Virus record (IMG/VR): IMGVR_UViG_3300029258_002750
Coordinates: 124,001 to 188,000 of that record
Length of the DNA stretch: 64,000 nucleotides
Strand: one strand, 5' to 3'
The notes beneath the pieces are model-generated. The model saw only the letters and a program-made list of their open reading frames with translations, had not been told where the DNA came from and made no database searches. Below, piece after piece: positions 2,494 through 45,751 of the stretch. Position numbers and translations under genes: made by a program. Each line of letters begins with the position of its first letter. Within the stretch, counting starts at the first letter, position 1.

Positions 2494-3071
2494 CGGACGA
2501 CGGCGGCCAGCTGATCGATCGCGCTCAGGGGTCCCAACTCGTCCAGCTCCACGTGCAGGGAGGCGATCTTGATTCCTTTGGCCTCGAAAACGACCAGGAG
2601 CACGTAGTCCTGGTCTCGGCTCGGCTCGGTGGCGCACTTCCAGTCCTTCGCGCGCCTGCGCCATCGCCGGTAACCCGCGCCGTCGCGCATCCCCTCGGGC
2701 GGGTCGGTGTTGTCCCAGTACGGGTAGTCCTCGACGTAGTCCGGCATTACCAGGTTGCCGCGCAGCTCGTGCTCGCCCCAGGGGGAAGCGAAGGTGAAGC
2801 GACCCTTCTCGGGGATCCAGATCTTCCAGCCGCACTCCAGGTCGAACCACGGTCGCCGGAACGACTCCTTGGCGATCTCGCGGAACATATCCATCGTCGC
2901 CATCACGCGGTGGCTCCAGGTATCGACCTCGACCCTCTCGGCCTTGAGCTGAGATGCGATCAGGCGCGCCCGGTCCCGGATGATCTGCCACTGAGCGTGA
3001 CGGACGTCTCGAATGAACGCCGCCAACTTGGCCTTCGGAAAGCGCTTGCCTTCGTAGATCTTGGTGCTCAC
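2490..3071 (-). CDS. hypothetical protein with C-tag
   Basis: GTG 3071; ends SAIDQLAAV. Confidence 0.8.
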   Translation of the reverse strand: MSTKIYEGKRFPKAKLAAFIRDVRHAQWQIIRDRARLIASQLKAERVEVDTWSHRVMATMDMFREIAKESFRRPWFDLECGWKIWIPEKGRFTFASPWGEHELRGNLVMPDYVEDYPYWDNTDPPEGMRDGAGYRRWRRRAKDWKCATEPSRDQDYVLLVVFEAKGIKIASLHVELDELGPLSAIDQLAAVVR

Positions 3072-3325
3072 TCGCCTTTGCCCTCCTCGCGCAGCAGCCG
3101 ATCGCCCAGGACGGATAGACGGGTGATCGCGTTGTCGGTGTAGGGCTCCCAGTCGTCGTATTCGTCCGCTCGCGACATCTGCATCCACTCATAGGCCACG
3201 TCGCAGACGTAGATGTCTTCCTCGAAGCCGGTCATTCTTTCGGCGTACGCTGGCTCGTTGTTGATCGCGGCCGGTCGCTTCGCCAGGCCGCTCTCGCTCA
3301 TCTCGATCGCGCGGCGGACCTTCAC
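3068..3325 (-). CDS. DUF2829-like-outline protein with C-tag
   Basis: RRAIEMSESGLAKR...DDWEP; NAITRLSVL. Confidence 0.7.
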   Translation of the reverse strand: MKVRRAIEMSESGLAKRPAAINNEPAYAERMTGFEEDIYVCDVAYEWMQMSRADEYDDWEPYTDNAITRLSVLGDRLLREEGKGE

Positions 3326-3573
3326 GTCAGCGCCGCCAGCCGCGAGATGGCGTCGGCCTGGATCAGCTCGTGAGTCCAGCGGTGGTAGGTGGCCCTCGAG
3401 TTGCCGAATCGCGGGCCGAGTTGGAAATCGACGACCCACAAGAGGCACTCGCCGATCCCATCAGGATCGTGACCCTCGGGGCACTCGCCGTGGATGCTGT
3501 CGCACACCCACTTGACGACCTCGCCCTCCCAGCCGTGGTCGCGATCGATCACTCGTAGCCCGGGGCGGATCAT
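3322..3573 (-). CDS. SH3/KOW-like protein with C-tag
   Basis: IRPGLRVID..WEGEVV; ends DAISRLAAL. Confidence 0.8.
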   Translation of the reverse strand: MIRPGLRVIDRDHGWEGEVVKWVCDSIHGECPEGHDPDGIGECLLWVVDFQLGPRFGNSRATYHRWTHELIQADAISRLAALT

Positions 3574-3579
3574 GGTGAC

Positions 3580-3588
3580 GTTCTACCC
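3580..3588 (-). promoter_or_regulatory. GGGTAGAAC putative promoter, leaderless
   Basis: 6 nt before ATG 3573. Confidence 0.75.
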
Positions 3589-3618
3589 CGGGTCAGCGCT
3601 CTACCCCGGGTCAGCGCT
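3583..3618. repeat. 18-bp tandem duplication CTACCCCGGGTCAGCGCT x2
   Basis: read directly; overlaps promoter and a GTCAGCGCTGAC palindrome. Confidence 0.9.
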
Positions 3619-3625
3619 GACTCGG

Positions 3626-4003
3626 CTATGGACTGACGGTAATGGCCGTCACGTGACCGGCCGTCGAGCTTCCATCTGCCGAGCGGACCTCGAACTGGAC
3701 TCGGAAGTTGCCCGCCAGTGTCGGTGTTCCGCTCACCACGCCGTCCGGTGATGTCGCCAGGCCGGTGGCCGAAAGCCCTCCGTCGTCCGAGAACGTGTAC
3801 GGCTGAACGCCGTACTGCGCAGTCAGGCGGTAGCTGTAAGCCTGACCGACCGTCCCATCTGGCGGGGAGATCGTCGCGAACTCGACGGCTCGAGTAGGCG
3901 TGGAGCTGGTTGTTGTCGTCTTGTCTCCATCGGAATCGCTACATCCGGCAGCGAACAAGCCGACGCACAGAACGAACGCGGCGGAGGAGATCAGGGCTCT
4001 CAT
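3626..4003 (-). CDS. lipoprotein with putative Ig (He_PIG-like) domain
   Basis: signal + lipobox FAAG-C; GTVGQAYSYRLTA...G.VSGTPT.AG.F pattern. Confidence 0.8.
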   Translation of the reverse strand: MRALISSAAFVLCVGLFAAGCSDSDGDKTTTTSSTPTRAVEFATISPPDGTVGQAYSYRLTAQYGVQPYTFSDDGGLSATGLATSPDGVVSGTPTLAGNFRVQFEVRSADGSSTAGHVTAITVSP

Positions 4004-4016
4004 CCCTCATGGCTCT

Positions 4017-4495: not shown

Positions 4496-4496
4496 G

Positions 4497-5343: not shown

Positions 5344-5975
5344 GGCTCTCCCTCGGTCTCCCGAATGCGGACAACCTCGTACCAGTCGACCTCGCACCGA
5401 GTGTGAGTCCACGCGGCGTCCTCGTCGACCTCCGGGTTGTCGTCCTCCAGCACGAAGACGACGAACTTGTGACGCTCCTGCTTCGGCGGTACCAGGACGC
5501 GGGCCTTCGCCCACCGCACGCGTTTTCTCCATGCGGCGAGCGATTGATCTGCCGCCTCGCGTGGCGTGATCGGCTCGCTGAGTCGCTGCGTGAGCTGGAA
5601 GCAGCGGTCCACGCCTTCTACGAAGCCCTCGTCGGCGATACGGACGATCTCGCCTGCCTGGATCCACTCGTTCTCGCGGTCGCGCGCCTGTCTGAACGCT
5701 TCGGCCTCGGCCCGCAGGTCTGCGATGGTCTGCTTCCAGCCGATCCAGGCGAGGTGATCCACGACCTCCAGCCGGGCGGTTTCCTCGGGTGCAAACGGGA
5801 ACCGGGCACCACAGGCCGACTCGAGGATCAGCGTGTCGTTCTCGACCTCCGTCGTCGTCTGCTCGACCACCTTGGCCAGGACCCCGGCCCACGCATCGGG
5901 AACGTCCGAGCTGGCAGACACGCGCAGGACATCGCCCGGCTTGATCTCGTTCTTCGCGACCATGTGAGTCAGCAC
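5340..5975 (-). CDS. SH3-like N-terminus plus coiled region
   Basis: IKPGDVLRV; internal tag-like EVVDHLAWI. Confidence 0.7.
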   Translation of the reverse strand: MLTHMVAKNEIKPGDVLRVSASSDVPDAWAGVLAKVVEQTTTEVENDTLILESACGARFPFAPEETARLEVVDHLAWIGWKQTIADLRAEAEAFRQARDRENEWIQAGEIVRIADEGFVEGVDRCFQLTQRLSEPITPREAADQSLAAWRKRVRWAKARVLVPPKQERHKFVVFVLEDDNPEVDEDAAWTHTRCEVDWYEVVRIRETEGEP

Positions 5976-6014
5976 GATGGCCTCACTCGTTGGCGGCCCC
6001 CAGCTCTCGGTGGG

Positions 6015-6551
6015 TCACGACCACTCCTCCAGTCCGGTGATGAGCGCGCCGATCTCCGCCAGCTTGGTCTCGGCGACCGCAACCACGGCGCGGATCGCTT
6101 CTTCGGGCGTGTCTCCGTGCTCGGCCCATCTGCCGCCAGACGAGTCCGGGCTTCCCAGGAACGCGGTGTAGTGATCGGGCAGGATCGCGGCCAGCTGATC
6201 GATCGCCGATCCCTTCAGCGTGGTTTCGCCGGTCCGACAGTTGTACGTGCCGTGTCGCCAGTGCTCCTTGAGCTTGATCCTGCGGCACGGCGACCAGACC
6301 GTGTAGTGCCAGCCCATGTTCTCGTGCACCTCGGCGGTCCAGCCCTTGCCCATGTGCTTGGCCAGTGCGTGCGCACGGCGCCTCGCCACCTGGTAAGCCT
6401 TCCAGGTGCACTTCGTACCGCACCACGGCGCGCAGTAGAGGTCGCCTTTACGAACGGCGCGCTTCGAGTAGAGATCCTCGATCTCTTTCTCTCGCTCGGC
6501 GGCCGTCTTGATCTTCTTCCGCTTCCGCTTCCTCCTCGATCGCGTTGTCAT
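6015..6551 (-). CDS. hypothetical protein with internal C-tag
   Basis: internal SAIDQLAAI; leaderless start. Confidence 0.8.
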   Translation of the reverse strand: MTTRSRRKRKRKKIKTAAEREKEIEDLYSKRAVRKGDLYCAPWCGTKCTWKAYQVARRRAHALAKHMGKGWTAEVHENMGWHYTVWSPCRRIKLKEHWRHGTYNCRTGETTLKGSAIDQLAAILPDHYTAFLGSPDSSGGRWAEHGDTPEEAIRAVVAVAETKLAEIGALITGLEEWS

Positions 6552-7026: not shown

Positions 7027-7361
7027 AGATCCTCGATGCTCCGTAGGCCCAGCCGGACCTCTTCCAGAGCCTTCTTCCTGGCGGTGAGCCGATCGGCTTC
7101 GGCGAGCATGGCGGCAGCCTGGTCTCTAGTGTGCCGGTCGTACTCTCCGTCGGTGTCCCCGGCCACATGCTCTAGTCCTCGGACGGTTGCGGCGAACATC
7201 GCGTTGAGCCTGCGGTCGAATCTCTCCCGGCGACGCCAGTATGCCCAGCTGTGAATGAGCCGATACCACCAGGAGCCGTGGGCGAGCCGGTCGCTCTCGG
7301 CCCTCAGCTTTTCCAGCTCGCGCCGCATCGATTCGTGGAGCTGCATCTCCTCGGGGGTCAT
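7023..7361 (-). CDS. helical hypothetical protein
   Basis: ATG 7361 coupled. Confidence 0.7.
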
Positions 7362-7966
7362 GCGATTCTCCGGCCGCAGCACCGCTTGTACTTCTTCCCG
7401 CTCCGGCATGGGCACGGATCGTTGCGCCTGAGCTTCTCCCCGGGTCGGCGGTAGGTGGACGCGGCCCGCGTGATCCGGCTGTGGTGCTCCCTGGAGGCGC
7501 TGGCTTCCATTGCGGCTCCTGCTGACATGGTGACTCGGTTCCAGAACATCGACCAGGAACCAAACGCCAGGCGATCTCCATCGGCCAGGCACTCGAACCA
7601 CTCGATGAGCCCGTCGCCGGTCTTTCTGTCAACACCGTGCTCCTCGGCCGCGCTCGACAGCGTACCGGCGAGGAGGATCAGCCCTCCCGATCCAGTAAGG
7701 AACCGGACGCCGTAGCCCTCGGGCGTGCCCCGGAGCGCCTCGGTGATGGAGAGCATCTCCTCCTTGTCTCGATCAACCCACGGCTGCGACAGCATGTAGC
7801 GCTGGGCAACGTCCCAGGCCGGGTCGTTGACGACCTTCAGCAGGATCGGGATCGCGGCCCAGTCGACCTCGACGTACCAGCCTTCGTCGACCCACAGGAA
7901 CGTGTCGCGCACGTGTACTACGCCGTCCGCCATGTGGACCTGCATTCCGGGGAACAACTCGCTCAT
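7358..7966 (-). CDS. SEC-C motif protein
   Basis: C-terminal [18 protein letters not shown]; leaderless start. Confidence 0.85.
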
Positions 7967-7972: not shown

Positions 7973-7981
7973 GTTCTACCC
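7973..7981 (-). promoter_or_regulatory. GGGTAGAAC putative promoter, leaderless
   Basis: 6 nt before ATG 7966; TAG is upstream stop. Confidence 0.75.
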
Positions 7982-8206
7982 AGGATCCAACTGAGCTAGC
8001 CGGTCGATCGCCGACGCTGGCCGCAGCTCGCTCTCGGCCATCAGGTAGGGCTTCGAGCGGTTCCCCAGCGCGAGCAGGTAGATCGAGCAGAAGCGATGGC
8101 CCTGTTCGTTGACGATGGAGCCCGCGATCTCAGCCAGGTGACCGTTGAGCACCGAGTTGAAGCCGGTGCTCGCGATGATCACGACGTCGCCCTCGTGGTA
8201 CCTCAC
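7976..8206 (-). CDS. SH3/KOW-like protein with C-tag
   Basis: YHEGDVVII...ESELRP; SAIDRLAQL. Confidence 0.8.
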   Translation of the reverse strand: MRYHEGDVVIIASTGFNSVLNGHLAEIAGSIVNEQGHRFCSIYLLALGNRSKPYLMAESELRPASAIDRLAQLDPG

Positions 8207-8679: not shown

Positions 8680-8683
8680 CAGC

Positions 8684-8932
8684 TCATCTCCTCGGGCGCG
8701 CAGAGCGTTCACCCAACTCGGCCAGCGCGTCGATCGCCGACAACTGGACGATCGACGGGTTGTTCTCTACCCACCGTACGGGCTCGTTGCGGCCGTCGAA
8801 CTTGATCAGGTTGTAGCGACAGTAGTCGACGCCATAGTCGAGGTGATCGACGACGGTACCGCGCACTCCTTCCGGGGCCAGGACGACGCGAGAGCCGATT
8901 GGGAGCAGTCCGTTTCCTCCAGCGCGGATCAC
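8684..8932 (-). CDS. SH3-like protein with C-tag (paralog of 31894-32133)
   Basis: LPIGSRVV..GTVVDH..WVEN..IV; SAIDALAEL. Confidence 0.8.
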   Translation of the reverse strand: MIRAGGNGLLPIGSRVVLAPEGVRGTVVDHLDYGVDYCRYNLIKFDGRNEPVRWVENNPSIVQLSAIDALAELGERSARPRR

Positions 8933-9372
8933 CCCATTCCCTCCAGCGCGGCGGTCAGCGCCGACCTCGCGCGCTCGTAGCGCTTCCGCAGCCCGTGGTC
9001 CTCGGGAAGGTCCGAGAGGTTGTCCTCGATGTCGGCCAGCTTCAGCCGGATCGCTCGCCAGCTGTCGCTCGCGACGATGTCTCCGATGAACTCCATGTAC
9101 GTGCGGTCGTCCGGCCGCGAGACGAGCTGGACCGTGTCGGCGACCTCGATACCGAACCACTCCAGCAGCTCCCGGTAGGTCGTCTCGGTGTCCTCCAGTA
9201 CGTCGTGAAGGACGGCGGCCTTCTTGAGCGTCTCGTCGGCGTACAGCACGCCCAGTCGGTTCGCAACTCGGAGCGGGTGCAGCACGTAGGGCTCGCCGCC
9301 CCACCGTGTCTGCCCGTGGTGCGCCTTGACGGCCAGGATGATCGCGTCTTCGTAGGTCATGCGTGTGCCCAT
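8929..9372 (-). CDS. HD-domain hydrolase, RelA/SpoT HD / small alarmone hydrolase-like
   Basis: AHHGQTR.GGEPYVLHPLRVA, AAVLHDVLEDT, KLADIEDN. Confidence 0.85.
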   Translation of the reverse strand: MGTRMTYEDAIILAVKAHHGQTRWGGEPYVLHPLRVANRLGVLYADETLKKAAVLHDVLEDTETTYRELLEWFGIEVADTVQLVSRPDDRTYMEFIGDIVASDSWRAIRLKLADIEDNLSDLPEDHGLRKRYERARSALTAALEGMG

Positions 9373-10464: not shown

Positions 10465-10500
10465 GTTCTACCCGGGAGTGTCGCCGACCCGGGGTAGAAC
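10465..10500. promoter_or_regulatory. divergent pair of GGGTAGAAC motifs
   Basis: minus copy 10465-10473 (N6-ATG), plus copy 10492-10500 (then AGGAGG). Confidence 0.75.
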
Positions 10501-16184: not shown

Positions 16185-16342
16185 ATGCTGGCGAGCCGTT
16201 CCAGGCCAATGACCAGTTCGAGTTGTGGTGGCGAGCCTACTACGGGCGGCCAGAGGACTACGCTGATCCAGAGGAGTTCTGGGTGCGGAAGTACTTCGCC
16301 TGGGCCGGTTGGCAGGCTGGTCTCGGCGGCGTTCTGACCTGA
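16181..16342 (+). CDS. 53-aa Trp-rich hypothetical protein
   Basis: GTG 16181 and TGA 16342 both coupled; below ORF-track cutoff. Confidence 0.6.
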   Translation: MNAGEPFQANDQFELWWRAYYGRPEDYADPEEFWVRKYFAWAGWQAGLGGVLT

Positions 16343-16614
16343 TGGCTGCGCCCAGCGAGCTTCTCGCGGCGCGTGTCCAGAAGATCGACCCTCGGATGAA
16401 GTGCCGCTGCTGCCTCCGGTGGATGCGCTACAAGCCGACCGAGAAGACGCCAGCCCAACGACGACTCCCGCCGAGCGCGAATGTCTGTACAGACTGCCGA
16501 CCAGCTGATGGCGCGCCGGTTCGGCCGGACTTCATGTCGCTGTCGGTTCCGCTCTGCGCCCGGCGTCGGTGCCCCGACGCGGTGGAGCGGCTGGGGAACC
16601 TGGTGAGGCCGTGA
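16342..16614 (+). CDS. Cys-rich paralog family member with C-tag
   Basis: CRCC..W...CTDC.P...CARRRC; DAVERLGNL. Confidence 0.8.
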   Translation: MAAPSELLAARVQKIDPRMKCRCCLRWMRYKPTEKTPAQRRLPPSANVCTDCRPADGAPVRPDFMSLSVPLCARRRCPDAVERLGNLVRP

Positions 16615-16859
16615 AGTCATGGGATGAGCTTGGCCTCGGCCCGCGCGGCCGGATGCGGTGTGTCTGCTGCCGCCAGTGGATGAGCCACGAGCCGACTGAG
16701 GAGGAGCCTGTTCGCAGGCGGCCTGGCCCCAACGCCTCGGTCTGCATGGGCTGCAAGCCCGTCGGCTGGACCGAGCCCTACCCGAGAGAGAACGAGACCA
16801 ACTGCGCCAGGCGCGGCTGTCCGAGCGCGGTGGAACGCCTGGGGGACCTCGTGCGATGA
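16611..16859 (+). CDS. Cys-rich paralog family member with C-tag
   Basis: CVCC..W...CMGC.P...CARRGC; SAVERLGDL. Confidence 0.8.
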   Translation: MKSWDELGLGPRGRMRCVCCRQWMSHEPTEEEPVRRRPGPNASVCMGCKPVGWTEPYPRENETNCARRGCPSAVERLGDLVR

Positions 16860-17071
16860 ACTGGATGGCTGACTACGAGGTGGGCGACGTCTTCCGGTGG
16901 TGCCGAGAGCGAGACGACCTCTGCCGGATCACGCACATCCGCGACGACGAGATCAACTTCGTCCACATCACCGGCCCGCACAAGGGGATGCCCGGCTACA
17001 CGCTGCCGCCACAGGATGTGGAGTTGGTATCGGCCGTCGAACTGCTCGGACTACTGGCGAAGCCCGGGTAG
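16856..17071 (+). CDS. SH3/KOW-like protein with C-tag
   Basis: YEVGDVFRW; SAVELLGLL. Confidence 0.8.
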   Translation: MNWMADYEVGDVFRWCRERDDLCRITHIRDDEINFVHITGPHKGMPGYTLPPQDVELVSAVELLGLLAKPG

Positions 17072-17074
17072 AAC
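17066..17074 (+). promoter_or_regulatory. GGGTAGAAC putative promoter, leaderless
   Basis: 6 nt before ATG 17081 of a 9-aa mini-ORF. Confidence 0.7.
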
Positions 17075-17106
17075 GTTGGTATGAGCGACCAACCGATGTG
17101 CGGGCG

Positions 17107-17361
17107 ATGACACCATCGCCAGGAGAGCAGCTCTGGGTCCGTCTTCCCGAGTGGGAGATGGGGAGGGATTCGCTCGACCTCATGGGCTACACCTGGTGGC
17201 GCGCGACCTACCAGGGAACGGTGACGACCGGCGCCGACTGCGAGCTGTGGGACGTCGAGCTGCACGCGCCTGATGGGAAGGCCCGGCCGCGACAGCACGT
17301 ACACCCCGAGGACACGCTCCCCATCTCGGCGATCGACCTCCTGGCGGAGCTGTCCCCATGA
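17107..17361 (+). CDS. SH3-like protein with C-tag
   Basis: PSPGEQLWVR; SAIDLLAEL. Confidence 0.75.
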   Translation: MTPSPGEQLWVRLPEWEMGRDSLDLMGYTWWRATYQGTVTTGADCELWDVELHAPDGKARPRQHVHPEDTLPISAIDLLAELSP

Positions 17362-17561
17362 GCGGCTGCAACCACCTGCCCATGCTCTCGGAGCCCACGC
17401 TCACGCTCTACTGCGCGAAGTGCGGCGCGTGGCTACGCCAGGTCAGCGCTGACCAGCTGACGGTCGTTCCTCGAGCTGAGGCCACGCGAGGTATCCACGT
17501 CTGCGAGAAGTGCGGCCACGAATGGATCGGCGACTCCGAGTACTGCGAGGAGTGCGGGTGA
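17358..17561 (+). CDS. Zn-ribbon protein
   Basis: CAKC...CEKC. Confidence 0.7.
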   Translation: MSGCNHLPMLSEPTLTLYCAKCGAWLRQVSADQLTVVPRAEATRGIHVCEKCGHEWIGDSEYCEECG

Positions 17562-17785
17562 GGCGCGGCGATCCGGTCCTGATCATGGTGCCGAAGCACG
17601 AGCCCGAGGAGTGGGCGCGCGGCATCTTCGTCGGGGACACGCCCTACCGCACGCCGGGCGGTGGGCGCGGCGAGCGGCTGTACCACGTCACGCGGGAAGG
17701 CGAGGGCTGCTACCTGACCGCGTCCGAGTTCCGGCTGCTATCGGCAGTAGAGCGGCTCGCCGAGCTGGTCGAGGGGGGCAGATGA
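17558..17785 (+). CDS. SH3/KOW-like protein with C-tag
   Basis: RRGDPVLI; SAVERLAEL. Confidence 0.8.
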   Translation: MRRGDPVLIMVPKHEPEEWARGIFVGDTPYRTPGGGRGERLYHVTREGEGCYLTASEFRLLSAVERLAELVEGGR

Positions 17786-18042
17786 ACATCAACAGTGCAT
17801 TGCGCCTGAGCCGTAACAGGTCCGCCGTCCGGCGGCCCAATAACCAGTGGGAGCCGAGCCGGGTCGAGCTGCACGAGGACAAGGACACGCTCGCCTGGTA
17901 CCTCCGATGGCGGCGACAGTGCTGGAACCGGCTGGGCGAGCGCATCTCCCACCATCTGGCCAGCGATCACGATGACTGGGAGCCCGATCGACCGAAGTCG
18001 GCGGTCGATGCGCTTGGAGAGTTGTCCCGTCGGCCTGGGTAG
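17782..18042 (+). CDS. DUF2829-like-outline protein with C-tag
   Basis: MNINSALRLSRNRSAVRR...DDWEP; SAVDALGEL. Confidence 0.75.
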   Translation: MNINSALRLSRNRSAVRRPNNQWEPSRVELHEDKDTLAWYLRWRRQCWNRLGERISHHLASDHDDWEPDRPKSAVDALGELSRRPG

Positions 18043-18045
18043 AAC
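18037..18045 (+). promoter_or_regulatory. GGGTAGAAC putative promoter
   Basis: TAG is upstream stop; followed by AGGAGG and ATG 18066. Confidence 0.7.
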
Positions 18046-18065
18046 GAAGGACAGGAGGACGTTCC

Positions 18066-19615: not shown

Positions 19616-19854
19616 AGCTCGAAGTCGGCAAGGTCTACCGAGTCATGCGTGGCGGCGCGTTGTGCGTCAGCGGCTTCGTCGGCTGCCTGGTGCGCGTCGA
19701 GAAGCTGGGCCACGAGCCTGAGGGCGAGAAGTGGGCCTGGGCGCGGCGGCTGAACAGCGGCGAGGCCCAGTGGTTCTACGAGAACGAGCTGCGGGAGGTG
19801 TCGGCGATCGATGCGCTGGCCGAGATCGTCCGGCCGGGTAGAACGAAGGCATGA
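19612..19854 (+). CDS. SH3/KOW-like protein with C-tag
   Basis: LEVGKVYRV...WFYENELRE; SAIDALAEI. Confidence 0.8.
   Translation: MKLEVGKVYRVMRGGALCVSGFVGCLVRVEKLGHEPEGEKWAWARRLNSGEAQWFYENELREVSAIDALAEIVRPGRTKA
19836..19844 (+). promoter_or_regulatory. GGGTAGAAC putative promoter, leaderless
   Basis: 6 nt before ATG 19851. Confidence 0.75.
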
Positions 19855-20117
19855 CCCTCCACCAGGCGATCGAGTGTTCCAGGTCCGGCCGGGCAGAGCG
19901 CGCGCCAGCCAACGGGCGGGAGCCCTACCGAGTGCGGAAGCTGTCGCAGCGGTGGATGTTTGGCTGTCGGACGCCACGCTACGCCACCGTCACGGTCGGC
20001 GGCGATGAGTTCGTCGATTGGCGCGAGGCGCTGAAGTTCGAGGACTGGCTGCCGCTGGACCCGAAGGATGCGGTGACGCGGCTCGGCGAGATCGCGCGGC
20101 CCGAGAGCGGTCCATGA
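19851..20117 (+). CDS. DUF2829-like-outline protein with C-tag
   Basis: MTLHQAIECSRSGRAER...EALKFEDWLP; DAVTRLGEI. Confidence 0.75.
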   Translation: MTLHQAIECSRSGRAERAPANGREPYRVRKLSQRWMFGCRTPRYATVTVGGDEFVDWREALKFEDWLPLDPKDAVTRLGEIARPESGP

Positions 20118-27203: not shown

Positions 27204-27554
27204 TCAGGCGTCGTCGTTCGGGTTGTAATGCCAGCTCACCTTGAGCGGTACGCACACCAGCGGATCGTGCGTCTCGATGACGCCGGTCTTGTAGTTGATC
27301 TCGCCGACCGTGTTCCCCTGGCAGCGGAGCTTGCCCATCCCGTCGTCCGTCATCGGGTACGGATCGGTGACCAGCACCGAGCCGGGTCCCACGGGGAAGT
27401 AGGGCAGACGATAGCGGGTGGGTCGGCGCTGACCCGTCGCTACGTCGCCTAGCCGCTCGACTGCTGAGGGCTCCTCTGGCTCGATGGTGCTGCCGTCGAT
27501 GCGGTTGGAGGAGTAGTACTTGTTGGGCGGCGCGATGTCGTTGTAGTTGGTCAC
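27204..27554 (-). CDS. hypothetical protein with internal C-tag
   Basis: SAVERLGDV. Confidence 0.7.
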   Translation of the reverse strand: MTNYNDIAPPNKYYSSNRIDGSTIEPEEPSAVERLGDVATGQRRPTRYRLPYFPVGPGSVLVTDPYPMTDDGMGKLRCQGNTVGEINYKTGVIETHDPLVCVPLKVSWHYNPNDDA

Positions 27555-27841
27555 GGCCGGGCCAGGTCGGCCAGATAGTCGATGACCATCTTGGGTGACA
27601 CCGGCTCCCAGTTGTTGGTCTTCTCGGCGTCGAGCATGGGGACGAGCTGGATGCGGATCTTGCCGGGCTCGTGCTCGCCGAGATGCTTGAGTGCGCGAGC
27701 GCGGGCGACCTGGCCGACGTTGCAGAGCTGGCGGCGCACGTAGGACATGGACCCGAGCGAGCAGTAGAAGACGAGCGGCTCGTAGCTCTCATCGACGGCG
27801 ATCTTGACGCGGCTGGCCGCGATGGCGTCGGTCGGGCTCAT
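27551..27841 (-). CDS. hypothetical protein with C-tag
   Basis: MVIDYLADL. Confidence 0.7.
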   Translation of the reverse strand: MSPTDAIAASRVKIAVDESYEPLVFYCSLGSMSYVRRQLCNVGQVARARALKHLGEHEPGKIRIQLVPMLDAEKTNNWEPVSPKMVIDYLADLARP

Positions 27842-30278: not shown

Positions 30279-30511
30279 GCTTCGCGACACTGTTCTGCGG
30301 CGGCTTCCGCGCGGGTGACCGTGTGCGTGTGAAGGGCGTCGAGATCATCGGCCGGATCAGGAAGTTTGAGATGCGCGCGGAGGAAGTGAAGGGCCTCGTG
30401 ATGTGGGCGATGGTGGTGTCGGAGACCCCTCGCATCGGCGCCGTCTGGTCGAAGATCGCCGAGCTGGAGCACGCGAGCGATGCCGTCACACGGCTGGGTC
30501 GGTTGGTGTGA
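30275..30511 (+). CDS. SH3/KOW-like protein with C-tag
   Basis: FRAGDRVRV; DAVTRLGRL. Confidence 0.8.
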   Translation: MSFATLFCGGFRAGDRVRVKGVEIIGRIRKFEMRAEEVKGLVMWAMVVSETPRIGAVWSKIAELEHASDAVTRLGRLV

Positions 30512-35107: not shown

Positions 35108-35664
35108 GCGAGTTCGATCCCGGCCACGGCTACAACGACGGCTACGGAGACTTCGGCCGCGATCCGGCTCCATACGATCCCCAGACTGCGCTGTGGGTGA
35201 TGGGGGCGATCGACGAGCTGCGCGGCCTCGGGATCATCGAGGAGATCGCGGGCGAGAATCCCCTTGGCGGCCGTGAAGACAGGAAGCGCTACCGCGAGCT
35301 GAAGAAGTCCGGCTTTGTTCCCCAGCTGACCGAAGCGATGAAGGTCGTCAAGGCCCACGTGCTCGCCGAAGATCAGCCTCTCTTCGAGCGCCTGTTCCGA
35401 GGGATCATCGAAGAAGGGTGGGAGTCGATCCGACGCGAGCGTGATCTCATGCTCGAAGAAGAACGACAGTCGCAGGTCAGCGCTGACGACGACGATGATC
35501 CCTACGCGCCGTTCCGCGAGTTCTACAAGCGGCACGGGATCTATCTGCCCAAGGATTCGACTGCCGAGGGGCGCCCAGATGCGCAAAAAAAGGTGCCATC
35601 GGAAGAAGAGCCGCGCCCGCGCCCCGAGGACTACGGCTTCCCGAGCGACTGGGTGCTGCTATGA
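35104..35664 (+). CDS. acidic hypothetical protein
   Basis: GTG 35104 coupled. Confidence 0.7.
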   Translation: MSEFDPGHGYNDGYGDFGRDPAPYDPQTALWVMGAIDELRGLGIIEEIAGENPLGGREDRKRYRELKKSGFVPQLTEAMKVVKAHVLAEDQPLFERLFRGIIEEGWESIRRERDLMLEEERQSQVSADDDDDPYAPFREFYKRHGIYLPKDSTAEGRPDAQKKVPSEEEPRPRPEDYGFPSDWVLL

Positions 35665-36008
35665 CGAGTGTTCCGCCGATCGACCCACCATGCGCTGAGT
35701 GCGGGGCTGGCGAAGGTGAGCCGTGCGTAGGGCCGCACAGCGCGGACGTCGAGGGCGAGGAGCACGTCTACGCGATCGGCGACCGGGTCCAGTGGACCTC
35801 CTCCAGCGACGGCGGAATGAGCCGACGCCAGGTCGGCCCGATCGAGGGGACCGTTGCTGAGATCATGGACTCCGGCCGCGTTTGCGTGGACTGGGACAAG
35901 CCGTTCGACAGGAAGTATCGGTCGATCCCGATCGTCGTCTGGCCCGCTGACATCGAGCCGGTTGATGCTGTCTCGCGACTGGGGGATCTGCTCGATGACG
36001 GCGCCTGA
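35661..36008 (+). CDS. Zn finger + SH3-like protein with C-tag
   Basis: CAECGA..GEPC; YAIGDRVQW; DAVSRLGDL. Confidence 0.8.
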   Translation: MTSVPPIDPPCAECGAGEGEPCVGPHSADVEGEEHVYAIGDRVQWTSSSDGGMSRRQVGPIEGTVAEIMDSGRVCVDWDKPFDRKYRSIPIVVWPADIEPVDAVSRLGDLLDDGA

Positions 36009-36240
36009 GCCGGAGTTCAGCGTCGGCGACCACGTCGTTCACTATGTGCCTGAGGTCGGCATCCGCGAGCGCGGCGAGGTCAACTGGGTGCGCACGAGCA
36101 AAACACGCGTCAGCTACGATGTGATCTTCAGGCACGGGGACGGCCGTCTCAAGGGCCTGCTCAAGGAGGTCGATCCGGCGTGGCTGCTGCCGCTCTCAGC
36201 CGTCGAGCGGCTCGGAGACCTGGGAGACCTGGCAGGATGA
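35995..36240 (+). CDS. SH3/KOW-like protein with C-tag
   Basis: FSVGDHVVH; SAVERLGDL. Confidence 0.8.
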   Translation: MTAPEPEFSVGDHVVHYVPEVGIRERGEVNWVRTSKTRVSYDVIFRHGDGRLKGLLKEVDPAWLLPLSAVERLGDLGDLAG

Positions 36241-36605
36241 GCGGGCTGGCCGCGCTTGATCAGGCCGTGGTCGACCCGCGCGAGGGGTGGAAGCGCGTCT
36301 CCCAGTTCATCTGTCGGAGACAGTTCGACCGCGCGAAGGTCAAGTACTCGTCCGAGCGCGGTGGTCGTGTGCTGATTCGGCTGGTGGACGATGTCCCCGA
36401 GCGCACGATCACAACGCTGACCGCGCCCGGCTACCCCAACGAGATCGTGGTGGCAACGATGGCCCTCCTGGCGGACAGGATGCCGGAGGACCAGGCGATC
36501 TGCTCGTTGTGGGTGTGCTCACTGGCCGGACAGGTCACGGTCTACAGCCTGGAGCTTCATCCAGAGCCGTCTGCTGTTGATCAGCTCGGAGACCTGACGC
36601 GATGA
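36237..36605 (+). CDS. hypothetical protein with C-tag
   Basis: SAVDQLGDL. Confidence 0.75.
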   Translation: MSGLAALDQAVVDPREGWKRVSQFICRRQFDRAKVKYSSERGGRVLIRLVDDVPERTITTLTAPGYPNEIVVATMALLADRMPEDQAICSLWVCSLAGQVTVYSLELHPEPSAVDQLGDLTR

Positions 36606-40029: not shown

Positions 40030-40902
40030 ATGGGAATCTTCGGTGCACAACTGGACGATGACGCCATCCCGCAGGCGAAGCTCTCCCCGGATGTCCAGGC
40101 GAAGCTCCCCACCTGGGAGACCAAGACCGAGAACTTCGCGATCACAACCGCCGACAACGGCAAGGGCTACATCAACACGGGTGCGACCGGGCCGGTCAAG
40201 GGCACGTGCGCTGTGGGCCTGCCAGACGGCTTCGAGGTCTCCTTCCTCCGGGTCACGGCTCAGGACTTCTGGTTCCAGCCAGCGCCGGGCGAGGAGTGCT
40301 ACCGCACCGACCTCGGTACCTTGACCGGCTGGGGCACCAACCTTGCGGTCTCGATCAACGCCCTGGTCAATCGCATCACCTGGAAGCTCGTGGTCGACGG
40401 CGCCAATCGGATGTGGGTTCCGCTCGTCGGCACCGTGAACCTGAAGGCGCAGTACCCGCTCCAGGGTCTCGACCTCAAGGACAAGACCCCAGACGGAGCG
40501 GCCTTCAACGTCAATCCGCCGACATGCGCGGCCGGGCGCTGGGAGATCCGCATCCGGGCCGAGCCATCGGCCACGCTCCTGGGATCGCTCGAGTGGGACG
40601 GCGGGTTCACCTGGACAGATGGCGCCGTCGCTGGCGTGTCTGACCTGCTCTATCTGGAGATCGACGCTTCCCTGACGCACGCGGGCGACGATGTGGTCTG
40701 GTCCGACGATCCGGCCGACGACCAGTTCCTCACCCTTTCCTACAGCACCGGCGGCGGCTTCCTCACGCTCTCCACGATCAAGCCCTACGAGGGGCCGCTG
40801 ACCATCGGCCGGGGACAGCTGCTCGACTACTGGATCGGCCAGGACGGACGGCTCTACGCGCGCAACGGCGGTGCGACCCCGTTCCCCTACGAGGCGGTCT
40901 AG
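40030..40902 (+). CDS. putative tail fibre / structural protein
   Basis: AIPQAKLS repeat-like motif; Thr/Gly/Trp beta-rich. Confidence 0.55.
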   Translation: MGIFGAQLDDDAIPQAKLSPDVQAKLPTWETKTENFAITTADNGKGYINTGATGPVKGTCAVGLPDGFEVSFLRVTAQDFWFQPAPGEECYRTDLGTLTGWGTNLAVSINALVNRITWKLVVDGANRMWVPLVGTVNLKAQYPLQGLDLKDKTPDGAAFNVNPPTCAAGRWEIRIRAEPSATLLGSLEWDGGFTWTDGAVAGVSDLLYLEIDASLTHAGDDVVWSDDPADDQFLTLSYSTGGGFLTLSTIKPYEGPLTIGRGQLLDYWIGQDGRLYARNGGATPFPYEAV

Positions 40903-41135
40903 CTCTCCGGCAAGCTACCCAGCTGACTGACCGCGTCCTTCGGTTTGACCGGCTCCCAGTCGGCGAACAGCTCTGCGTTGGCCCAGCGCTCGTCCTGCGT
41001 CTCCGGCCCAATCCCGTGGTACATCACGTAGACGCCTAGTTCGGTCCAGGTAACCGAGTACGGTTCCTCGCTGTTCGCCGGTTTGCGGCGGGCTGCGGGT
41101 ACCTCGCTGCGTCGTAGCGCCGTGTAGAGCTGCAT
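40899..41135 (-). CDS. DUF2829-like-outline protein with C-tag
   Basis: MQLYTALRRSEVPAARR...AELFADWEP; DAVSQLGSL. Confidence 0.75.
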   Translation of the reverse strand: MQLYTALRRSEVPAARRKPANSEEPYSVTWTELGVYVMYHGIGPETQDERWANAELFADWEPVKPKDAVSQLGSLPES

Positions 41136-41141: not shown

Positions 41142-41150
41142 GTTCTACCC
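41142..41150 (-). promoter_or_regulatory. GGGTAGAAC putative promoter, leaderless
   Basis: 6 nt before ATG 41135. Confidence 0.75.
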
Positions 41151-42134: not shown

Positions 42135-42140
42135 GTCAGC

Positions 42141-42560: not shown

Positions 42561-42811
42561 AGCGTCGGCTTCCAGTCGGAACCCCGGTAGTGATCACCGG
42601 CGGCGGCCACGAAGGGGCACTCGGCTACATCACCTGGGACGAGGCTCTCAGCGCGCTGCCGGGCTTCGTTACGGTCCAGCCGGACGACTACAGGGGATTT
42701 GCCGTTCGAGTGCGGATCGAGGACGTGGAGCCCCGCAGCGCGGTCGATGCCCTGGCATCGGTCGTGAGGGAGGAAGAACGTGGAGCGGACGCTGGTACTG
42801 ATCAAGCCTGA
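42557..42811 (+). CDS. SH3/KOW-like protein with C-tag
   Basis: LPVGTPVVITGGGHEGALG; SAVDALASV. Confidence 0.8.
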   Translation: MKRRLPVGTPVVITGGGHEGALGYITWDEALSALPGFVTVQPDDYRGFAVRVRIEDVEPRSAVDALASVVREEERGADAGTDQA

Positions 42812-43229
42812 CGCGGTCTCGCGCGGGCTCGTCGGAGAGATCATCTCCCGCTTCGAGCGGAAGAAGCTGAAGCTCCTCGGTCTGAAGATGCTGCGCGCCG
42901 ACGGGGAGCTTGTCGCACAGCACTATGCCGAGCACGTTGACAAGCCGTTCTACGCGGAGCTGGCCCTCTTCACGATGAGCGGGCCGATCGTGGCGATGGT
43001 TCTGGCGGGTCACCAGGCCGTTCACGTCGTGCGCACCTTGATGGGACCGACCGATGGGGTAGGCGCGCCGCTCGGAACGATCCGGGGTGACTTCGCGTCC
43101 GGCGATCCGATCCGCGAGAACCTCGTCCACGGCTCCGACTCAGCTGAGTCGGCTGCGCGGGAACTCGAGTTGTTCTTCGGCGGCGACTTCGATGTGGACG
43201 ACCATCGGGTCAGCGCTGACGGGCCGTGA
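42780..43229 (+). CDS. ndk: nucleoside-diphosphate kinase
   Basis: ERTLVLIKPDAV.RGLVGEIISRFE, GTIRGDF, NLVHGSDS. Confidence 0.95.
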   Translation: MERTLVLIKPDAVSRGLVGEIISRFERKKLKLLGLKMLRADGELVAQHYAEHVDKPFYAELALFTMSGPIVAMVLAGHQAVHVVRTLMGPTDGVGAPLGTIRGDFASGDPIRENLVHGSDSAESAARELELFFGGDFDVDDHRVSADGP

Positions 43230-43513: not shown

Positions 43514-43860
43514 GCAGGAAGAAGCCCGGAATCCCGATGAGAATCACGGGGCCGGTCCTGTTGGCCTTGCGAATGGCTGGGGCGCATCATCTTTACGAGA
43601 ACGAGAACGATGACGAGGTCCGGTGGTGGCTGGACCGGCTGCCTCGACCGGACTGGGAAGAGGCGGCTCGTAGCTACACAGGTGTTGGCTCGAAGACTAT
43701 TCGGATTCCGGCCGCCAAGGTGGACTCGTTCATCCGCTTCTTGAAGATTGCTGCCACGAATCCGCACCAGGGGCCTGGGGTCGGTGGTGCGATCGAGAGC
43801 CGGATCGAGAAGCTCGAGTCGATGAGCAGCATCGAGCGGCTCGGTGCGATCGAGCCGTGA
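43510..43860 (+). CDS. hypothetical protein, paralog of 42141-42560, with C-tag
   Basis: SSIERLGAI. Confidence 0.8.
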   Translation: MSRKKPGIPMRITGPVLLALRMAGAHHLYENENDDEVRWWLDRLPRPDWEEAARSYTGVGSKTIRIPAAKVDSFIRFLKIAATNPHQGPGVGGAIESRIEKLESMSSIERLGAIEP

Positions 43861-44216
43861 GGTTCTGGGAGGCGGTCCGCTGGAGCAAGAGCGGTGTTGC
43901 GTCCTACGTGGTGAAGGAGCCAGGCTGTCCAGAAAACCCGATGACTGAGGAGGAGATCGAGGAGGCGTTCTGCCTCTCCAGCCGCCTGAACGTGAAGATC
44001 GCGCAGGGTCAGCCGGTTCTCATCAACGACAACCACTACGCAGCCGATCGCGTGCCGGATCTGATCGAGAACAGCGTCGAGTGGGAGCCATTTCCGCCCG
44101 TCCGCGACGCGATTTCTGAGCTGGGGAGTCTGACCCCCGAGGTAGAACTGGGGCATGACCCTGGACGAGGCCCTGGGATGGAGCGATCGGCGCGCGGCGG
44201 TCCGTACACCAGCTGA
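43857..44216 (+). CDS. DUF2829-like-outline protein with C-tag
   Basis: MRFWEAVRWSKSGVA...VEWEP; DAISELGSL. Confidence 0.7.
   Translation: MRFWEAVRWSKSGVASYVVKEPGCPENPMTEEEIEEAFCLSSRLNVKIAQGQPVLINDNHYAADRVPDLIENSVEWEPFPPVRDAISELGSLTPEVELGHDPGRGPGMERSARGGPYTS
44140..44148 (+). promoter_or_regulatory. AGGTAGAAC promoter variant, leaderless
   Basis: 6 nt before ATG 44155. Confidence 0.65.
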
Positions 44217-44385
44217 TCCGATCGAACCGTGCGCGGTCATAGATCCACCGTGCACGTGTTGTCCGACGGTTGCGCTCACGGCCACGCGCGAGCCGACTGA
44301 CGTCGCTTGGGCCTACACCTTCGAGAACTGGGAGCCGGTCAGCGCCGACCTGGGCGCGCTGGCGATGAGCGGGACGCGCCGGTGA
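44155..44385 (+). CDS. DUF2829-like-outline protein
   Basis: MTLDEALGWSDRRAAVR...FENWEP. Confidence 0.7.
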   Translation: MTLDEALGWSDRRAAVRTPADPIEPCAVIDPPCTCCPTVALTATREPTDVAWAYTFENWEPVSADLGALAMSGTRR

Positions 44386-44600
44386 AGTTCCGTGTGGGGC
44401 AGGAGGTAGTGGTTACGGCAGGCGATGCCCAGGTCAACCGAGGGGCGGTCGCCAAGGTGACTCAGATCGAACATGCGTCTGTGAACCCCCACCGGGTGCG
44501 GATCAGCCACCACGGATGGAGCACGTGGGTCACGCCCGATCAGATCGAACATGCGAACGCGATCGAGGGCCTCGGTGGCCTGGCGGATGTCGTCCGATGA
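44382..44600 (+). CDS. SH3/KOW-like protein with C-tag
   Basis: KFRVGQEVVV; NAIEGLGGL. Confidence 0.8.
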   Translation: MKFRVGQEVVVTAGDAQVNRGAVAKVTQIEHASVNPHRVRISHHGWSTWVTPDQIEHANAIEGLGGLADVVR

Positions 44601-44950
44601 GCCTCTCGGATGTTCCCCTGTCCGACCTGGCCGACGAGGTGTTGTTCCACGGGGTAGAGCAAACGCTGCTCAACAAGGTCCGTGAGCGCTCTCGCTCGGT
44701 CTACAAGGTCGCCCGCGACCTCATCGATCATGCGGAAGGTCCCAAGACCATCGGACGGTTCATCGACGCGCGTGATCAGGCAGAGCACGGCATGGACTCG
44801 AACAGACTCTCCTCGGCGCTCATGGCGCTCTGTCGAGCCGAGGCCAAGCTCGCCAACACCGACGATGTGAAGCACCGCGCCCGGCGCTACTTGGTCTCAG
44901 TTCTGCCTGCCGTCGATGCGCTTGCCATCCTGGGTAGGGAGGAATCGTGA
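44597..44950 (+). CDS. helical protein with C-tag
   Basis: PAVDALAIL. Confidence 0.75.
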   Translation: MSLSDVPLSDLADEVLFHGVEQTLLNKVRERSRSVYKVARDLIDHAEGPKTIGRFIDARDQAEHGMDSNRLSSALMALCRAEAKLANTDDVKHRARRYLVSVLPAVDALAILGREES

Positions 44951-45225
44951 CCTACCAGCAGGCGTGCAAGCTCAGTGAGGTTGGGATCGCTGTCCGATGC
45001 AGCGGTGACCTCGCGATCTACTGGACGTGGGACCCAGACGCGCAGGCGGTGCCGAATCCTCGAGCGCCAGCTCGCGCGGTGTGCCCACGCGCGGCCCGCA
45101 TGGTGGACCACCGCTATGCCGGTCTCAACGACGACTGGCAGCCGTGGATGCCGCGCGACGTGATCACAATGCTCGGTGACCTCGTCCGCGAGAAGGAGGA
45201 ACGAGCGTGGCTGTCGGTAGCGTAG
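44947..45225 (+). CDS. DUF2829-like-outline protein with C-tag
   Basis: MTYQQACKLSEVGIAVR...NDDWQP; DVITMLGDL. Confidence 0.75.
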   Translation: MTYQQACKLSEVGIAVRCSGDLAIYWTWDPDAQAVPNPRAPARAVCPRAARMVDHRYAGLNDDWQPWMPRDVITMLGDLVREKEERAWLSVA

Positions 45226-45241
45226 AGGGGAGAGGGGCGCT

Positions 45242-45751
45242 GTGAACTTGGATTCGGCGATACGGTCTAGTGGCATTCGCGTTGCGGTTCGCGAGAGCCT
45301 CGTACCGCTGGTCACGGGCCGGGGCCGGTACCGTACCCGTGAGGAGTGGCGGAAGATCCGCATCTGGGAACTGCCCTACATTGCTACGAAGAACCTGGTC
45401 AAGTTCGACGACAGGACAGGGGAGCCGGTCTACGAGACGAGGGTCTACACCAACCAAGGGCAGCCGGTTGCGCTCGCGCTCGCGAAGCGTCGGGACGACG
45501 ATGACTGGGTTCCGGTCGACCGTGTGGACCCGATCACGCTCATGGGCAACCTGCTCGATCGCGAGGAGATCGTGGCCCGGCAGCGTCGGATCACGACCAG
45601 GAAGCGCGAGCTGGGGGTTCCCGAGGGACAGGAGTGGACCTGTACCTGGATCCACGACCTGATCGACGATGGCGAAGACGAGCGCGACCTGATGGACCGG
45701 ATCTTCGGCGGTCCTCCTGCCGCCATCAAGCCGCCGATTCCGCCGGTATGA
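45242..45751 (+). CDS. DUF2829-like-outline protein with C-tag
   Basis: MNLDSAIRSSGIRVAVR...DDDWVP; DPITLMGNL. Confidence 0.75.
   Translation: MNLDSAIRSSGIRVAVRESLVPLVTGRGRYRTREEWRKIRIWELPYIATKNLVKFDDRTGEPVYETRVYTNQGQPVALALAKRRDDDDWVPVDRVDPITLMGNLLDREEIVARQRRITTRKRELGVPEGQEWTCTWIHDLIDDGEDERDLMDRIFGGPPAAIKPPIPPV

What the first reader, a model, noticed from the sequence alone, without database searches (positions are those of the whole stretch)
3068..45751. Eight paralogs with a DUF2829/Tad2-like outline, most carrying the tag
ORFs 3068, 17782, 19851, 40899, 43857, 44155, 44947 and 45242 share an N-terminal helix M-x-[LIFY]-x-x-A-[LIVC]-x-x-S-x4-A-x-R. They also share a terminal [DE]-W-x-P (DDWEP, FEDWLP, FADWEP, NDDWQP) directly before the tag, with variable middles. 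This resembles the DUF2829 layout (F..AL..LK.G..V.R ... D..A.DW). That family includes Tad2, a phage sponge for Thoeris gcADPR and cyclic-dinucleotide signals. The resemblance is by eye only. If real, this is an unusually large, diversified panel of candidate immune-signal sponges.
Basis: inference. Interest (0 to 1): 0.75.

Follow-up and report, generated by a model that had tools for sequence, protein, structure and literature searches.

The report
Tagged Tad2-like paralogs, jumbo phage
An uncultured 275-kb phage from sediment and seawater carries ten intact copies (nine in this window) of a small protein whose predicted fold most resembles the Tad2/DUF2829 anti-defence sponge, but the residues Tad2 uses to hold its ligand are missing, so a sponge role is unproven.

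Summary
The eight ORFs are coding and share an N-terminal helix and a C-terminal [DEN]-W-x-P placed just before the genome-wide C-terminal "tag" helix. The family is larger than reported: nine copies in the window, one more intact copy and one frameshifted copy elsewhere in the 275,101-bp phage genome, plus copies in related metagenomic phages.

The Tad2/DUF2829 reading is only partly supported.
- Sequence methods fail: Pfam, PHROGs and NCBIfam give no hit, an exhaustive HMMER profile search finds only the family itself, and hhalign P ranges from 0.002 to 0.09 depending on the alignment.
- Language-model neighbours of two of three paralogs tested are mostly PF11195.

The Tad2 ligand-contact signature (GWNGK, W-x-x-S-Q-x-D) is not conserved, and the tetramer prediction gave no answer. 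My best reading is a highly diverged, expanded, tag-fused DUF2829-like binder family. Immune-signal sponging remains a hypothesis.

The parts
3068..3325 (-). Family member (85 aa). Likely GTG start at 3325, not 3448. Tag NAITRLSVL with a 15-aa tail.
   Evidence: leave-one-out E 2.6e-4
17782..18042 (+). Family member (86 aa). Ends DDWEP, then linker DRPK and tag SAVDALGEL.
   Evidence: leave-one-out E 4e-7
19851..20117 (+). Family member (88 aa). EDWLP, linker LDPK, tag DAVTRLGEI. Source of AF2 model 1, with element order helix-4 strands-helix-strand plus tag helix.
   Evidence: leave-one-out E 7e-8
27551..27841 (-). N-terminus M-S-P-T-D-A-I-A-A-S, NNWEP, tag variant MVIDYLADL.
   Evidence: E 3.6e-9 with the 19-sequence HMM that includes it; leave-one-out E 0.19
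40899..41135 (-). Family member (78 aa). ADWEP, linker VKPK, tag DAVSQLGSL. Source of AF2 model 2 (pLDDT 89).
   Evidence: leave-one-out E 5e-6
43857..44216 (+). Family member (119 aa), the most divergent. VEWEP, tag DAISELGSL, then a 27-aa tail that overlaps the next member by 62 nt.
   Evidence: leave-one-out E 0.8 without the tag; an ortholog-like copy in relative G001; the two SNPs in the tail are non-synonymous
44155..44385 (+). Family member (76 aa). ENWEP. Tag degenerate or shortened (VSADLGAL).
   Evidence: leave-one-out E 5e-8; the two SNPs in the overlap are synonymous in this frame
44947..45225 (+). Family member (92 aa). DDWQP, tag DVITMLGDL with a 13-aa tail.
   Evidence: leave-one-out E 7.5e-6
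45242..45751 (+). Long-form family member (169 aa). DDDDWVP, tag-like DPITLMGNL, then a 65-aa conserved C-terminal extension. This is the subtype most widely found in related contigs.
   Evidence: leave-one-out E 1e-4

Best explanation
The ORFs encode a lineage-specific, expanded family of small phage proteins: ten intact copies plus one frameshifted copy per genome, nine of them in this window.

Architecture (shown or predicted):
- A 60-90-aa domain whose predicted fold is a stripped-down version of the Tad2/DUF2829 fold. It has an N-terminal helix, a small antiparallel sheet, a short helix, and a last strand ending in [DEN]-W.
- A short Pro-containing linker (typically P-x-x-P-K).
- The same 9-residue amphipathic C-terminal helix, the 'tag' ([SD]-A-[VI]-[DET]-x-L-[GA]-x-[LIV]), that ends about 90-100 other small proteins of this phage.

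Inferred mechanism:
- The conserved N-terminal helix corresponds to the helix that interlocks dimers into the tetramer in Tad2. Together with the terminal D-W it forms a constant scaffold.
- The hypervariable middle corresponds to the loops that make the ligand pockets in Tad2. It would give each paralog its own binding specificity.
- The proteins would act early in infection as stoichiometric binders (sponges or decoys) of host molecules.
- The tag would dock them, like the other tagged proteins, onto one shared partner or destination.

Shown: paralogy, coding status, conservation in related phages, tag architecture.
Predicted: the fold.
Inferred only: oligomerisation, binding, ligand identity and the anti-defence role.

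The canonical gcADPR pocket of Tad2 is not present, so if these proteins are sponges their ligands or binding mode differ from SPO1 Tad2.
For: The family is real:
- establish the shared motifs and paralogy.
- Coding-frame GC3 is 0.74-0.94.
- Near-identical DNA is present in sediment and seawater metagenomes from at least three studies.
- Homologues occur only in related uncultured phage contigs. Three copies lie in a 120-kb relative that also carries tags.

Fold evidence:
- AF2 model of the 40899 copy: pLDDT 89, pTM 0.75. AF2 model of the 19851 copy: pLDDT 75, pTM 0.63. The secondary-structure order of the 19851 model matches the published Tad2 topology minus helix alpha2.
- Foldseek against 350,542 PDB chains puts SPO1 Tad2 (8smf_B) at rank 1 for model 1, TM 0.41-0.44 over the full length. 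Everything else has TM <= 0.30.
- AFDB clusters (2.3 million): a Tad2-like protein is rank 1 for both models (E 0.37 and 0.17, probability 0.57 and 0.69, TM up to 0.50).
- BFVD: five Tad2-like proteins are among the top 28 hits.

Other evidence:
- ESM Atlas features: 40 of 100 neighbours (all clusters) and 75 of 100 (named clusters only) are PF11195 clusters for two paralogs.
- hhalign of the 10-paralog profile against a 45-sequence DUF2829 profile gives P 0.004 local and 0.0022 global. It aligns M1 with Tad2 M5, invariant A6 with invariant A10, and terminal DW with DW.
- Context: the genes sit in long arrays of small, mostly ORFan genes.
Against: - No significant sequence match to PF11195 or any other family in Pfam, PHROGs or NCBIfam.
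- The exhaustive HMMER profile search of 1.84 billion representatives returns only 10 hits, all from the family itself.
- A PDB sequence-profile search finds nothing.
- hhalign P rises to 0.068-0.093 with a 19-sequence family alignment. Single sequences give P 0.03-1.
- Foldseek against PDB with the more confident model 2 does not list Tad2 in its top 50.
- The ESM Atlas shape searches give no Tad2-like cluster.
- The third paralog tested by features points to PF18066 and NinX instead.
- The DUF2829-invariant W25-N26-G27-K28, W73, S76, Q77 and D79 include the gcADPR contacts. They are not conserved in this family; only scattered paralogs keep a Trp at roughly either position, and this was judged by eye.
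- Homotetramer prediction gave no answer, score 0.01.
- No RNA run was listed, so there is no expression evidence.
Confidence: 0.45

Rival explanations
1. The paralogs are bona fide Tad2-type sponges: homotetramers that sequester known immune signals (gcADPR, His-ADPR, cyclic di- or mononucleotides) of Thoeris, CBASS or Pycsar, with each paralog tuned to a different signal.
For: - Same fold-level evidence as the best explanation.
- The Tad2 family is known to be functionally versatile. It uses two different pockets and binds His-ADPR, cUMP/cCMP, N7-cADPR and CBASS dinucleotides (bioRxiv 10.1101/2025.08.24.671296).
- The conserved part of the family is the helix that builds the tetramer in Tad2.
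Against: - The gcADPR-contact residues and the family-invariant GWNGK and W-x-x-SQ-x-D motifs are absent.
- The Pfam model does not match.
- Tetramer prediction gave no answer.
- The host and its defence systems are unknown.
Confidence: 0.12
2. The family is an unrelated, clade-specific ORFan family. The likeness to DUF2829 (a short N-terminal helix, a small sheet and a terminal DW) is chance or convergence in a very small alpha/beta domain. Its function is tied to the tag system, for example as adaptors, regulators or cargo of whatever reads the tag, rather than to ligand sponging.
For: - No sequence method reaches significance.
- Model 2 gives no Tad2 hit in Foldseek against PDB.
- The family is restricted to one small phage clade.
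- About a quarter of the proteome carries the same tag on unrelated domains.
Against: The same pre-specified family comes out on top in independent libraries and with two different aligners, for two paralogs that are only about 35% identical. It also comes out on top in a sequence-feature search that uses no structure. By chance this is very unlikely, because DUF2829 supplies only a handful of the 48,161 PDB representatives.
Confidence: 0.3
3. The ORFs are not real genes: chance open frames in a GC-rich genome, or an assembly artefact.
For: High-GC genomes have many long spurious ORFs (230 ORFs of at least 40 aa in 22 kb). No RNA run was listed.
Against: - Codon-position GC matches real genes.
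- The ORFs tile without gaps with their neighbours.
- The motifs occur far above chance.
- Protein-level conservation with substitutions is seen in other phage contigs.
- The same DNA appears in several independent metagenomes.
Confidence: 0.01

Closest known systems
Tad2 of Bacillus phage SPO1 (PF11195, DUF2829/Tad2-like; PDB 8SMF, 8WJE)
   Same: - Small size (about 60-90 aa for the domain).
- The domain starts at the initiator Met.
- An N-terminal helix with an invariant Ala in the same register.
- A following antiparallel sheet and a short helix before the last strand.
- The domain ends in [DE]-D-W plus 2-3 residues.
- It is the best PDB match of model 1, and hhalign aligns the two end to end.
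   Different: - No significant sequence similarity.
- Lacks helix alpha2 and the G-W-N-G-K and W-x-x-S-Q-x-D motifs that carry the gcADPR contacts.
- Carries an extra linker plus tag helix.
- Ten intact paralogs in this genome, whereas the one search run on SPO1 found a single PF11195 match.
- Tetramerisation not shown.
ModTad2 (Myroides odoratus prophage, PDB 9EIB) and AcrIIA7/HgmTad2 (PDB 8KBI)
   Same: They are ranks 1 and 2 of 48,161 PDB representatives for both AF2 models in a structure-only search, each covering essentially the whole domain. They belong to the same DUF2829 family, whose members bind different ligands in two kinds of pocket.
Short (about 63 aa) 'Thoeris anti-defense 2-like' proteins in AlphaFold DB (cluster representative A0A3D5P7N7)
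   Same: Best AFDB-cluster hit of model 2 and rank 3 of model 1. TM is 0.50 normalised by the hit, over residues 1-66 against 1-63. This shows that minimal DUF2829 forms of this size exist.
   Different: E 0.17-0.82, which is not significant. It has no tag. I could not retrieve the sequence to compare motifs.

Membership tests
PF11195 (DUF2829 / Tad2-like) | Match to the Pfam HMM at or above the gathering score (25 bits) | tested here: not met
   hmmscan of the 8 ORFs at E up to 10 gives no PF11195 hit. A six-frame search of the whole phage genome with PF11195 gives 0 candidates. The same is true of relative G001. Positive control: SPO1 Tad2 scores 84.8 bits.
PF11195 (DUF2829 / Tad2-like) | Profile-profile similarity to a DUF2829 alignment | tested here: inconclusive
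   hhalign P is 0.004 (local) and 0.0022 (global) with the 10-paralog profile, in the expected register. It is 0.03-0.09 with the tag included and 0.068-0.093 with 19 sequences. Reported probability is at most 8%.
PF11195 (DUF2829 / Tad2-like) | Fold: N-terminal helix, antiparallel beta-sheet, short helices in loops (topology from bioRxiv 10.1101/2023.05.01.538930) | tested here: inconclusive
PF11195 (DUF2829 / Tad2-like) | Invariant R-x-G-W-N-G-K motif in the beta1-beta2 loop (W25 and N26 contact gcADPR) | tested here: not met
   The motif is invariant in the 45-sequence DUF2829 alignment. In this family the position holds P-A-N-x-x-E-P or other sequences. Only the copy outside the window has a G-T-W-N-like string, judged by eye.
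PF11195 (DUF2829 / Tad2-like) | W-L-A-S-Q-T-D motif before the last helix (W73, S76, T78, D79 contact the ligand) | tested here: not met
   The motif is invariant or near-invariant in DUF2829 (contacts). This family has only a near-invariant Ala and, in about half of the members, an aromatic residue 7-12 positions before the DW.
PF11195 (DUF2829 / Tad2-like) | Domain ends in [AE]-[ED]-D-W followed by 2-3 residues | tested here: met
   D84 and W85 are invariant in DUF2829. W is invariant and preceded by D/E/N in all members here. The two are aligned to each other in the global hhalign.
Tad2-type sponge (function) | Homotetramer with ligand pockets at protomer interfaces | tested here: inconclusive
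   Four-copy complex prediction of the 40899 copy scored 0.01. The tool's verdict was 'no answer, not evidence for or against'.
Tad2-type sponge (function) | Binds and sequesters an immune signalling molecule; inhibits Thoeris, CBASS or Pycsar | not testable with these tools
   This needs purified protein and binding or plaque assays.

The most novel reading that the evidence does not exclude
The phage runs a proteome-wide sorting or docking system. A 9-residue C-terminal amphipathic helix marks about 100 small, mostly ORFan proteins, roughly a quarter of its genes, for one shared receptor or destination such as a compartment, the virion or a hub protein. One class of this cargo is a tenfold-expanded, hyperdiversified set of minimal Tad2-like sponges that together soak up a broad spectrum of host immune or signalling molecules by pockets unlike those of known Tad2 proteins.
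Probability: 0.12. Interest if true: 0.85.

Novelty: new variant of a known kind. Interest (0 to 1): 0.5.

Why it matters
If these proteins are DUF2829-fold binders, they would extend the Tad2 family well beyond what sequence profiles can see. The family would include minimal 60-aa domains that lack the canonical pocket. It would also be a case in which one phage diversified the scaffold into ten paralogs, which is a natural experiment in sponge specificity.

The fusion of every copy to a tag shared by about a quarter of the phage's proteins suggests these binders are delivered to, or assembled on, a common partner. I know of no such arrangement for sponge proteins.

If the fold likeness is only superficial, the family is just one of the many paralogous ORFan families of jumbo phages, and the tag is the more interesting object.

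Tried and rejected
- Pfam, PHROGs and NCBIfam scans of the members gave nothing relevant, only noise at E > 0.08.
- A PDB sequence-profile search gave 0 hits at E <= 10.
- The exhaustive HMMER profile search without the tag returned only the family itself. A word-seeded search with a 19-sequence profile returned 15 hits, none with a Pfam domain.
- The genome search 'relatives' is not available for virus records.
- ESM Atlas shape searches gave no informative neighbour.
- Enlarging the family alignment with three copies from relative G001 did not strengthen the hhalign link; it weakened it.
- The homotetramer prediction gave no answer.
- Laying contigs of four other metagenomes showed about 99% identical strains with too few SNPs for a selection test.
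- No RNA run was listed.
- A literature search for a shared C-terminal tag in jumbo phages found nothing relevant.
- I considered that the tag might be a DNA- or RNA-level element and rejected it. Its codons vary freely (Ser as TCG or AGC, Leu as CTG or CTC, all Ala and Gly codons), while the peptide and its helical periodicity are kept.
- I considered a sliding-clamp-binding or degron motif for the tag, but nothing tested here supports either.
- I considered Phage_ABA_S/NinX (PF18066, PF10765), suggested by features for one paralog. No HMM hit supports it.
Full report
**Setting.** The window is bases 124,001-188,000 of a single 275,101-bp IMG/VR virus record with direct terminal repeats. It is rated complete and has 65% GC. 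PHROGs annotation of the large genes shows a tailed, myovirus-like jumbo phage. It has baseplate wedge, tape measure and tail fibre genes and its own replication set: DnaB-type helicase, primase, clamp, DNA polymerase and UvsX-like recombinase. No close relative is in the GenBank phage collection. Near-identical DNA is present in sediment and seawater metagenomes of several studies, so the sequence is not a one-off assembly artefact. A simple GC3-based gene call gives about 420 genes at 89% coding density. Long arrays of small genes lie between about 95 and 178 kb of the genome.

**Checking the observation.** All eight ORFs are present and have the codon-position GC signature of real genes in this genome.
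- Aligned, they share invariant M1, A6, S10 and a C-terminal W-x-P, with near-invariant A15.
[DENV]-W-x-P followed by the tag occurs 10 times against 0.03. The two features always occur together.
- With the tag cut off, leave-one-out HMMs still recover 7 of 10 members at E < 1e-3. The 43857 copy is the weakest.
- An HMM of the family finds a ninth copy in the window (27551-27841, minus strand), a tenth intact copy at genome 122,761-123,024, and a copy split over two frames near genome 95.9-96.2 kb. It finds nothing else.
- The ORF listed as 3068-3448 most likely starts at the GTG at 3325.

**The family elsewhere.**
- An exhaustive HMMER search of 1.84 billion representative proteins, using the tag-less profile, gives only ten hits at E < 1e-3. 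All are this family, from this phage or close relatives.
- A second, word-seeded search with 19 sequences adds more copies of the long form (the 45242 type) on contigs up to 160 kb. None has a Pfam domain.
- A degenerate DNA pattern for the tag picks out one 120-kb IMG/VR contig (53% complete, 68% GC). It has 19 tags in the 28 kb I read and three family members.
- The family and the tag therefore travel together in a small clade of uncultured phages.

**Is it DUF2829/Tad2? Sequence evidence.**
- Pfam, PHROGs and NCBIfam scans are negative.
- The PF11195 model finds nothing in this genome or the relative, while it scores 84.8 bits on SPO1 Tad2.
- I fetched SPO1 Tad2 (L004:1489-1755) and built a 45-sequence DUF2829 alignment from its homologues, all annotated PF11195.
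- hhalign of the 10-paralog profile against it gives P 0.004 (local) and 0.0022 (global).
- This is not robust. With the tag included P is 0.03-0.09. With 19 family sequences it is 0.068-0.093. Single sequences give 0.03-1.
- Sequence alone does not establish homology.

**Is it DUF2829/Tad2? Structure and feature evidence.**
- AlphaFold2 with the family alignment gives pLDDT 75 and pTM 0.63 for the 19851 copy, and pLDDT 89 and pTM 0.75 for the 40899 copy.
- The 19851 model has helix, four strands, short helix and strand. This is the published Tad2 order without helix alpha2. The tag follows as a separate helix.
- For model 2, Foldseek against the PDB shows no Tad2.
- In AFDB clusters a Tad2-like protein is rank 1 for both models. 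In BFVD, five of the top 28 hits are Tad2-like.
- By ESM Atlas sequence features, 40 of 100 neighbours (all clusters) and 75 of 100 (named clusters only) are PF11195 clusters for two paralogs. A third paralog points to Phage_ABA_S/NinX.
- Each score is sub-threshold. The repeated first rank of one pre-specified small family, across libraries, aligners and paralogs, is hard to get by chance.
- I put the probability of a genuine DUF2829-like fold at about 0.6.

**What is and is not conserved.**
- In SPO1 Tad2 the ligand is held by W25 and N26 (the GWNGK loop), W73, S76, T78 and D79, with I63, T65, D67 and H71. Helix alpha1 interlocks the two dimers into the tetramer.
- In my DUF2829 alignment, W25-N26-G27-K28, W73, S76, Q77 and D79 are invariant.
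- In this family the conserved parts are the N-terminal helix and the terminal DW.
- The GWNGK and W-x-x-SQ-x-D motifs are absent. The middle is so variable that it barely aligns.
- By eye, some paralogs keep a Trp near one or the other position, but not as a set.
- If these are sponges, they do not use the SPO1 pocket. The Tad2 family is known to use a second pocket and to bind very different signals, so this weakens the idea but does not exclude it.
- A four-copy complex prediction gave no answer.

**The tag.**
- A pattern [SD]-A-[VI]-[DET]-x-L-[GA]-x-[LIV] lies a median of 5 residues before the stop in 96 coding-frame ORFs of the genome. My gene call finds it in 88 genes, and looser variants occur in more.
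- The first position is a helix N-cap residue (S, D, N, T or G). Hydrophobic residues fall at positions 3, 6 and 9. AF2 models it as a helix.
- Codon usage within the tag is free: Ser as TCG or AGC, Leu as CTG or CTC, all Ala and Gly codons. Selection therefore acts on the peptide.
- Of 77 tagged proteins outside the family, only four have any Pfam hit: two phage zinc-finger domains, one WGR and one RNase H.
- In the family, the Pro of DW-x-P and the following P-K belong to the linker that precedes tags elsewhere as well.
- I could not identify what reads the tag.

**Verdict.** The Tad2-like outline is the best fold hypothesis but is not a demonstrable family membership. The sponge function is a reasonable but untested guess, made less likely for the known Tad2 ligands by the missing pocket residues.

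Noticed in passing
whole genome; in the window e.g. 399-680(-), 7976-8206(-), 16342-20769(+), 29638-30511(+), 35661-36605(+): A C-terminal 9-residue amphipathic helix 'tag' ([SD]-A-[VI]-[DET]-x-L-[GA]-x-[LIV], median 5 aa before the stop) ends about 90-100 small, mostly ORFan proteins, roughly a quarter of the genes. Its codons vary freely, so the peptide is what is selected. It is also present in a 120-kb relative (IMGVR_UViG_3300033153_010718) and in ENA contigs. What reads the tag is unknown.
   Followed up: partly
window, 36 sites, e.g. 19836-19844(+), 41142-41150(-), 10465-10473(-)/10492-10500(+), 28300(-)/28310(+), 39184(-)/39194(+): The 9-mer GGGTAGAAC (up to 1 mismatch) occurs 36 times against 6.9 expected. 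It is co-oriented with the genes, is typically 6-15 nt upstream of start codons, and forms back-to-back pairs where transcription diverges. It looks like a promoter or start-associated element, possibly giving near-leaderless mRNAs. Its TAG often serves as the stop codon of the upstream gene.
   Followed up: partly
L002:1919-2198 (genome about 95,919-96,198, minus strand), outside the window: An eleventh family copy is split over two reading frames. The N-terminal helix is in one frame, and NWEP plus the tag are in another. This could be a pseudogene, an assembly indel or a programmed shift.
   Followed up: partly
window 44155-44216: Two family members overlap by 62 nt, because the 43857 copy reads through the usual stop-containing motif and runs 27 aa beyond its tag. 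The two SNPs seen here in other metagenomes are synonymous in the 44155 frame and non-synonymous in the 43857 tail. The tail is probably unconstrained.
   Followed up: partly
window 46537-51789(+): A 1750-aa protein directly downstream of the 43857-45751 paralog cluster combines a UvrD-type helicase with a 2H phosphoesterase domain (PF13563, 32.7 bits, residues 1105-1245). From my own knowledge, this is the superfamily that includes the anti-CBASS nuclease Acb1 as well as RNA-repair LigT enzymes.
   Followed up: partly
window 1552-2208(-), 7358-7966(-); L007:3161-3772, 5411-6118: Proteins of about 200-235 aa end in a SEC-C-type zinc motif (C-x-C-x-S-G-K-K-[WY]-K-R-C-C). They recur in this phage and in its relative.
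   Followed up: no
genome 40,691-43,636(+) (L011), outside the window: The open frame upstream of and including the DNA polymerase domain contains three internal tag-like motifs at residues of about 115-340. It may be a run of small tagged genes fused in frame, or a polymerase with a tagged N-terminal region.
   Followed up: no
window 42780-43229(+) and 8929-9360(-): Auxiliary nucleotide-metabolism genes sit among the small-gene arrays. One is a nucleoside diphosphate kinase (PF00334, E 2e-49). The other is an HD-domain-like protein, judged by eye from its H-H-G-Q...H-D motifs and not tested.
   Followed up: partly
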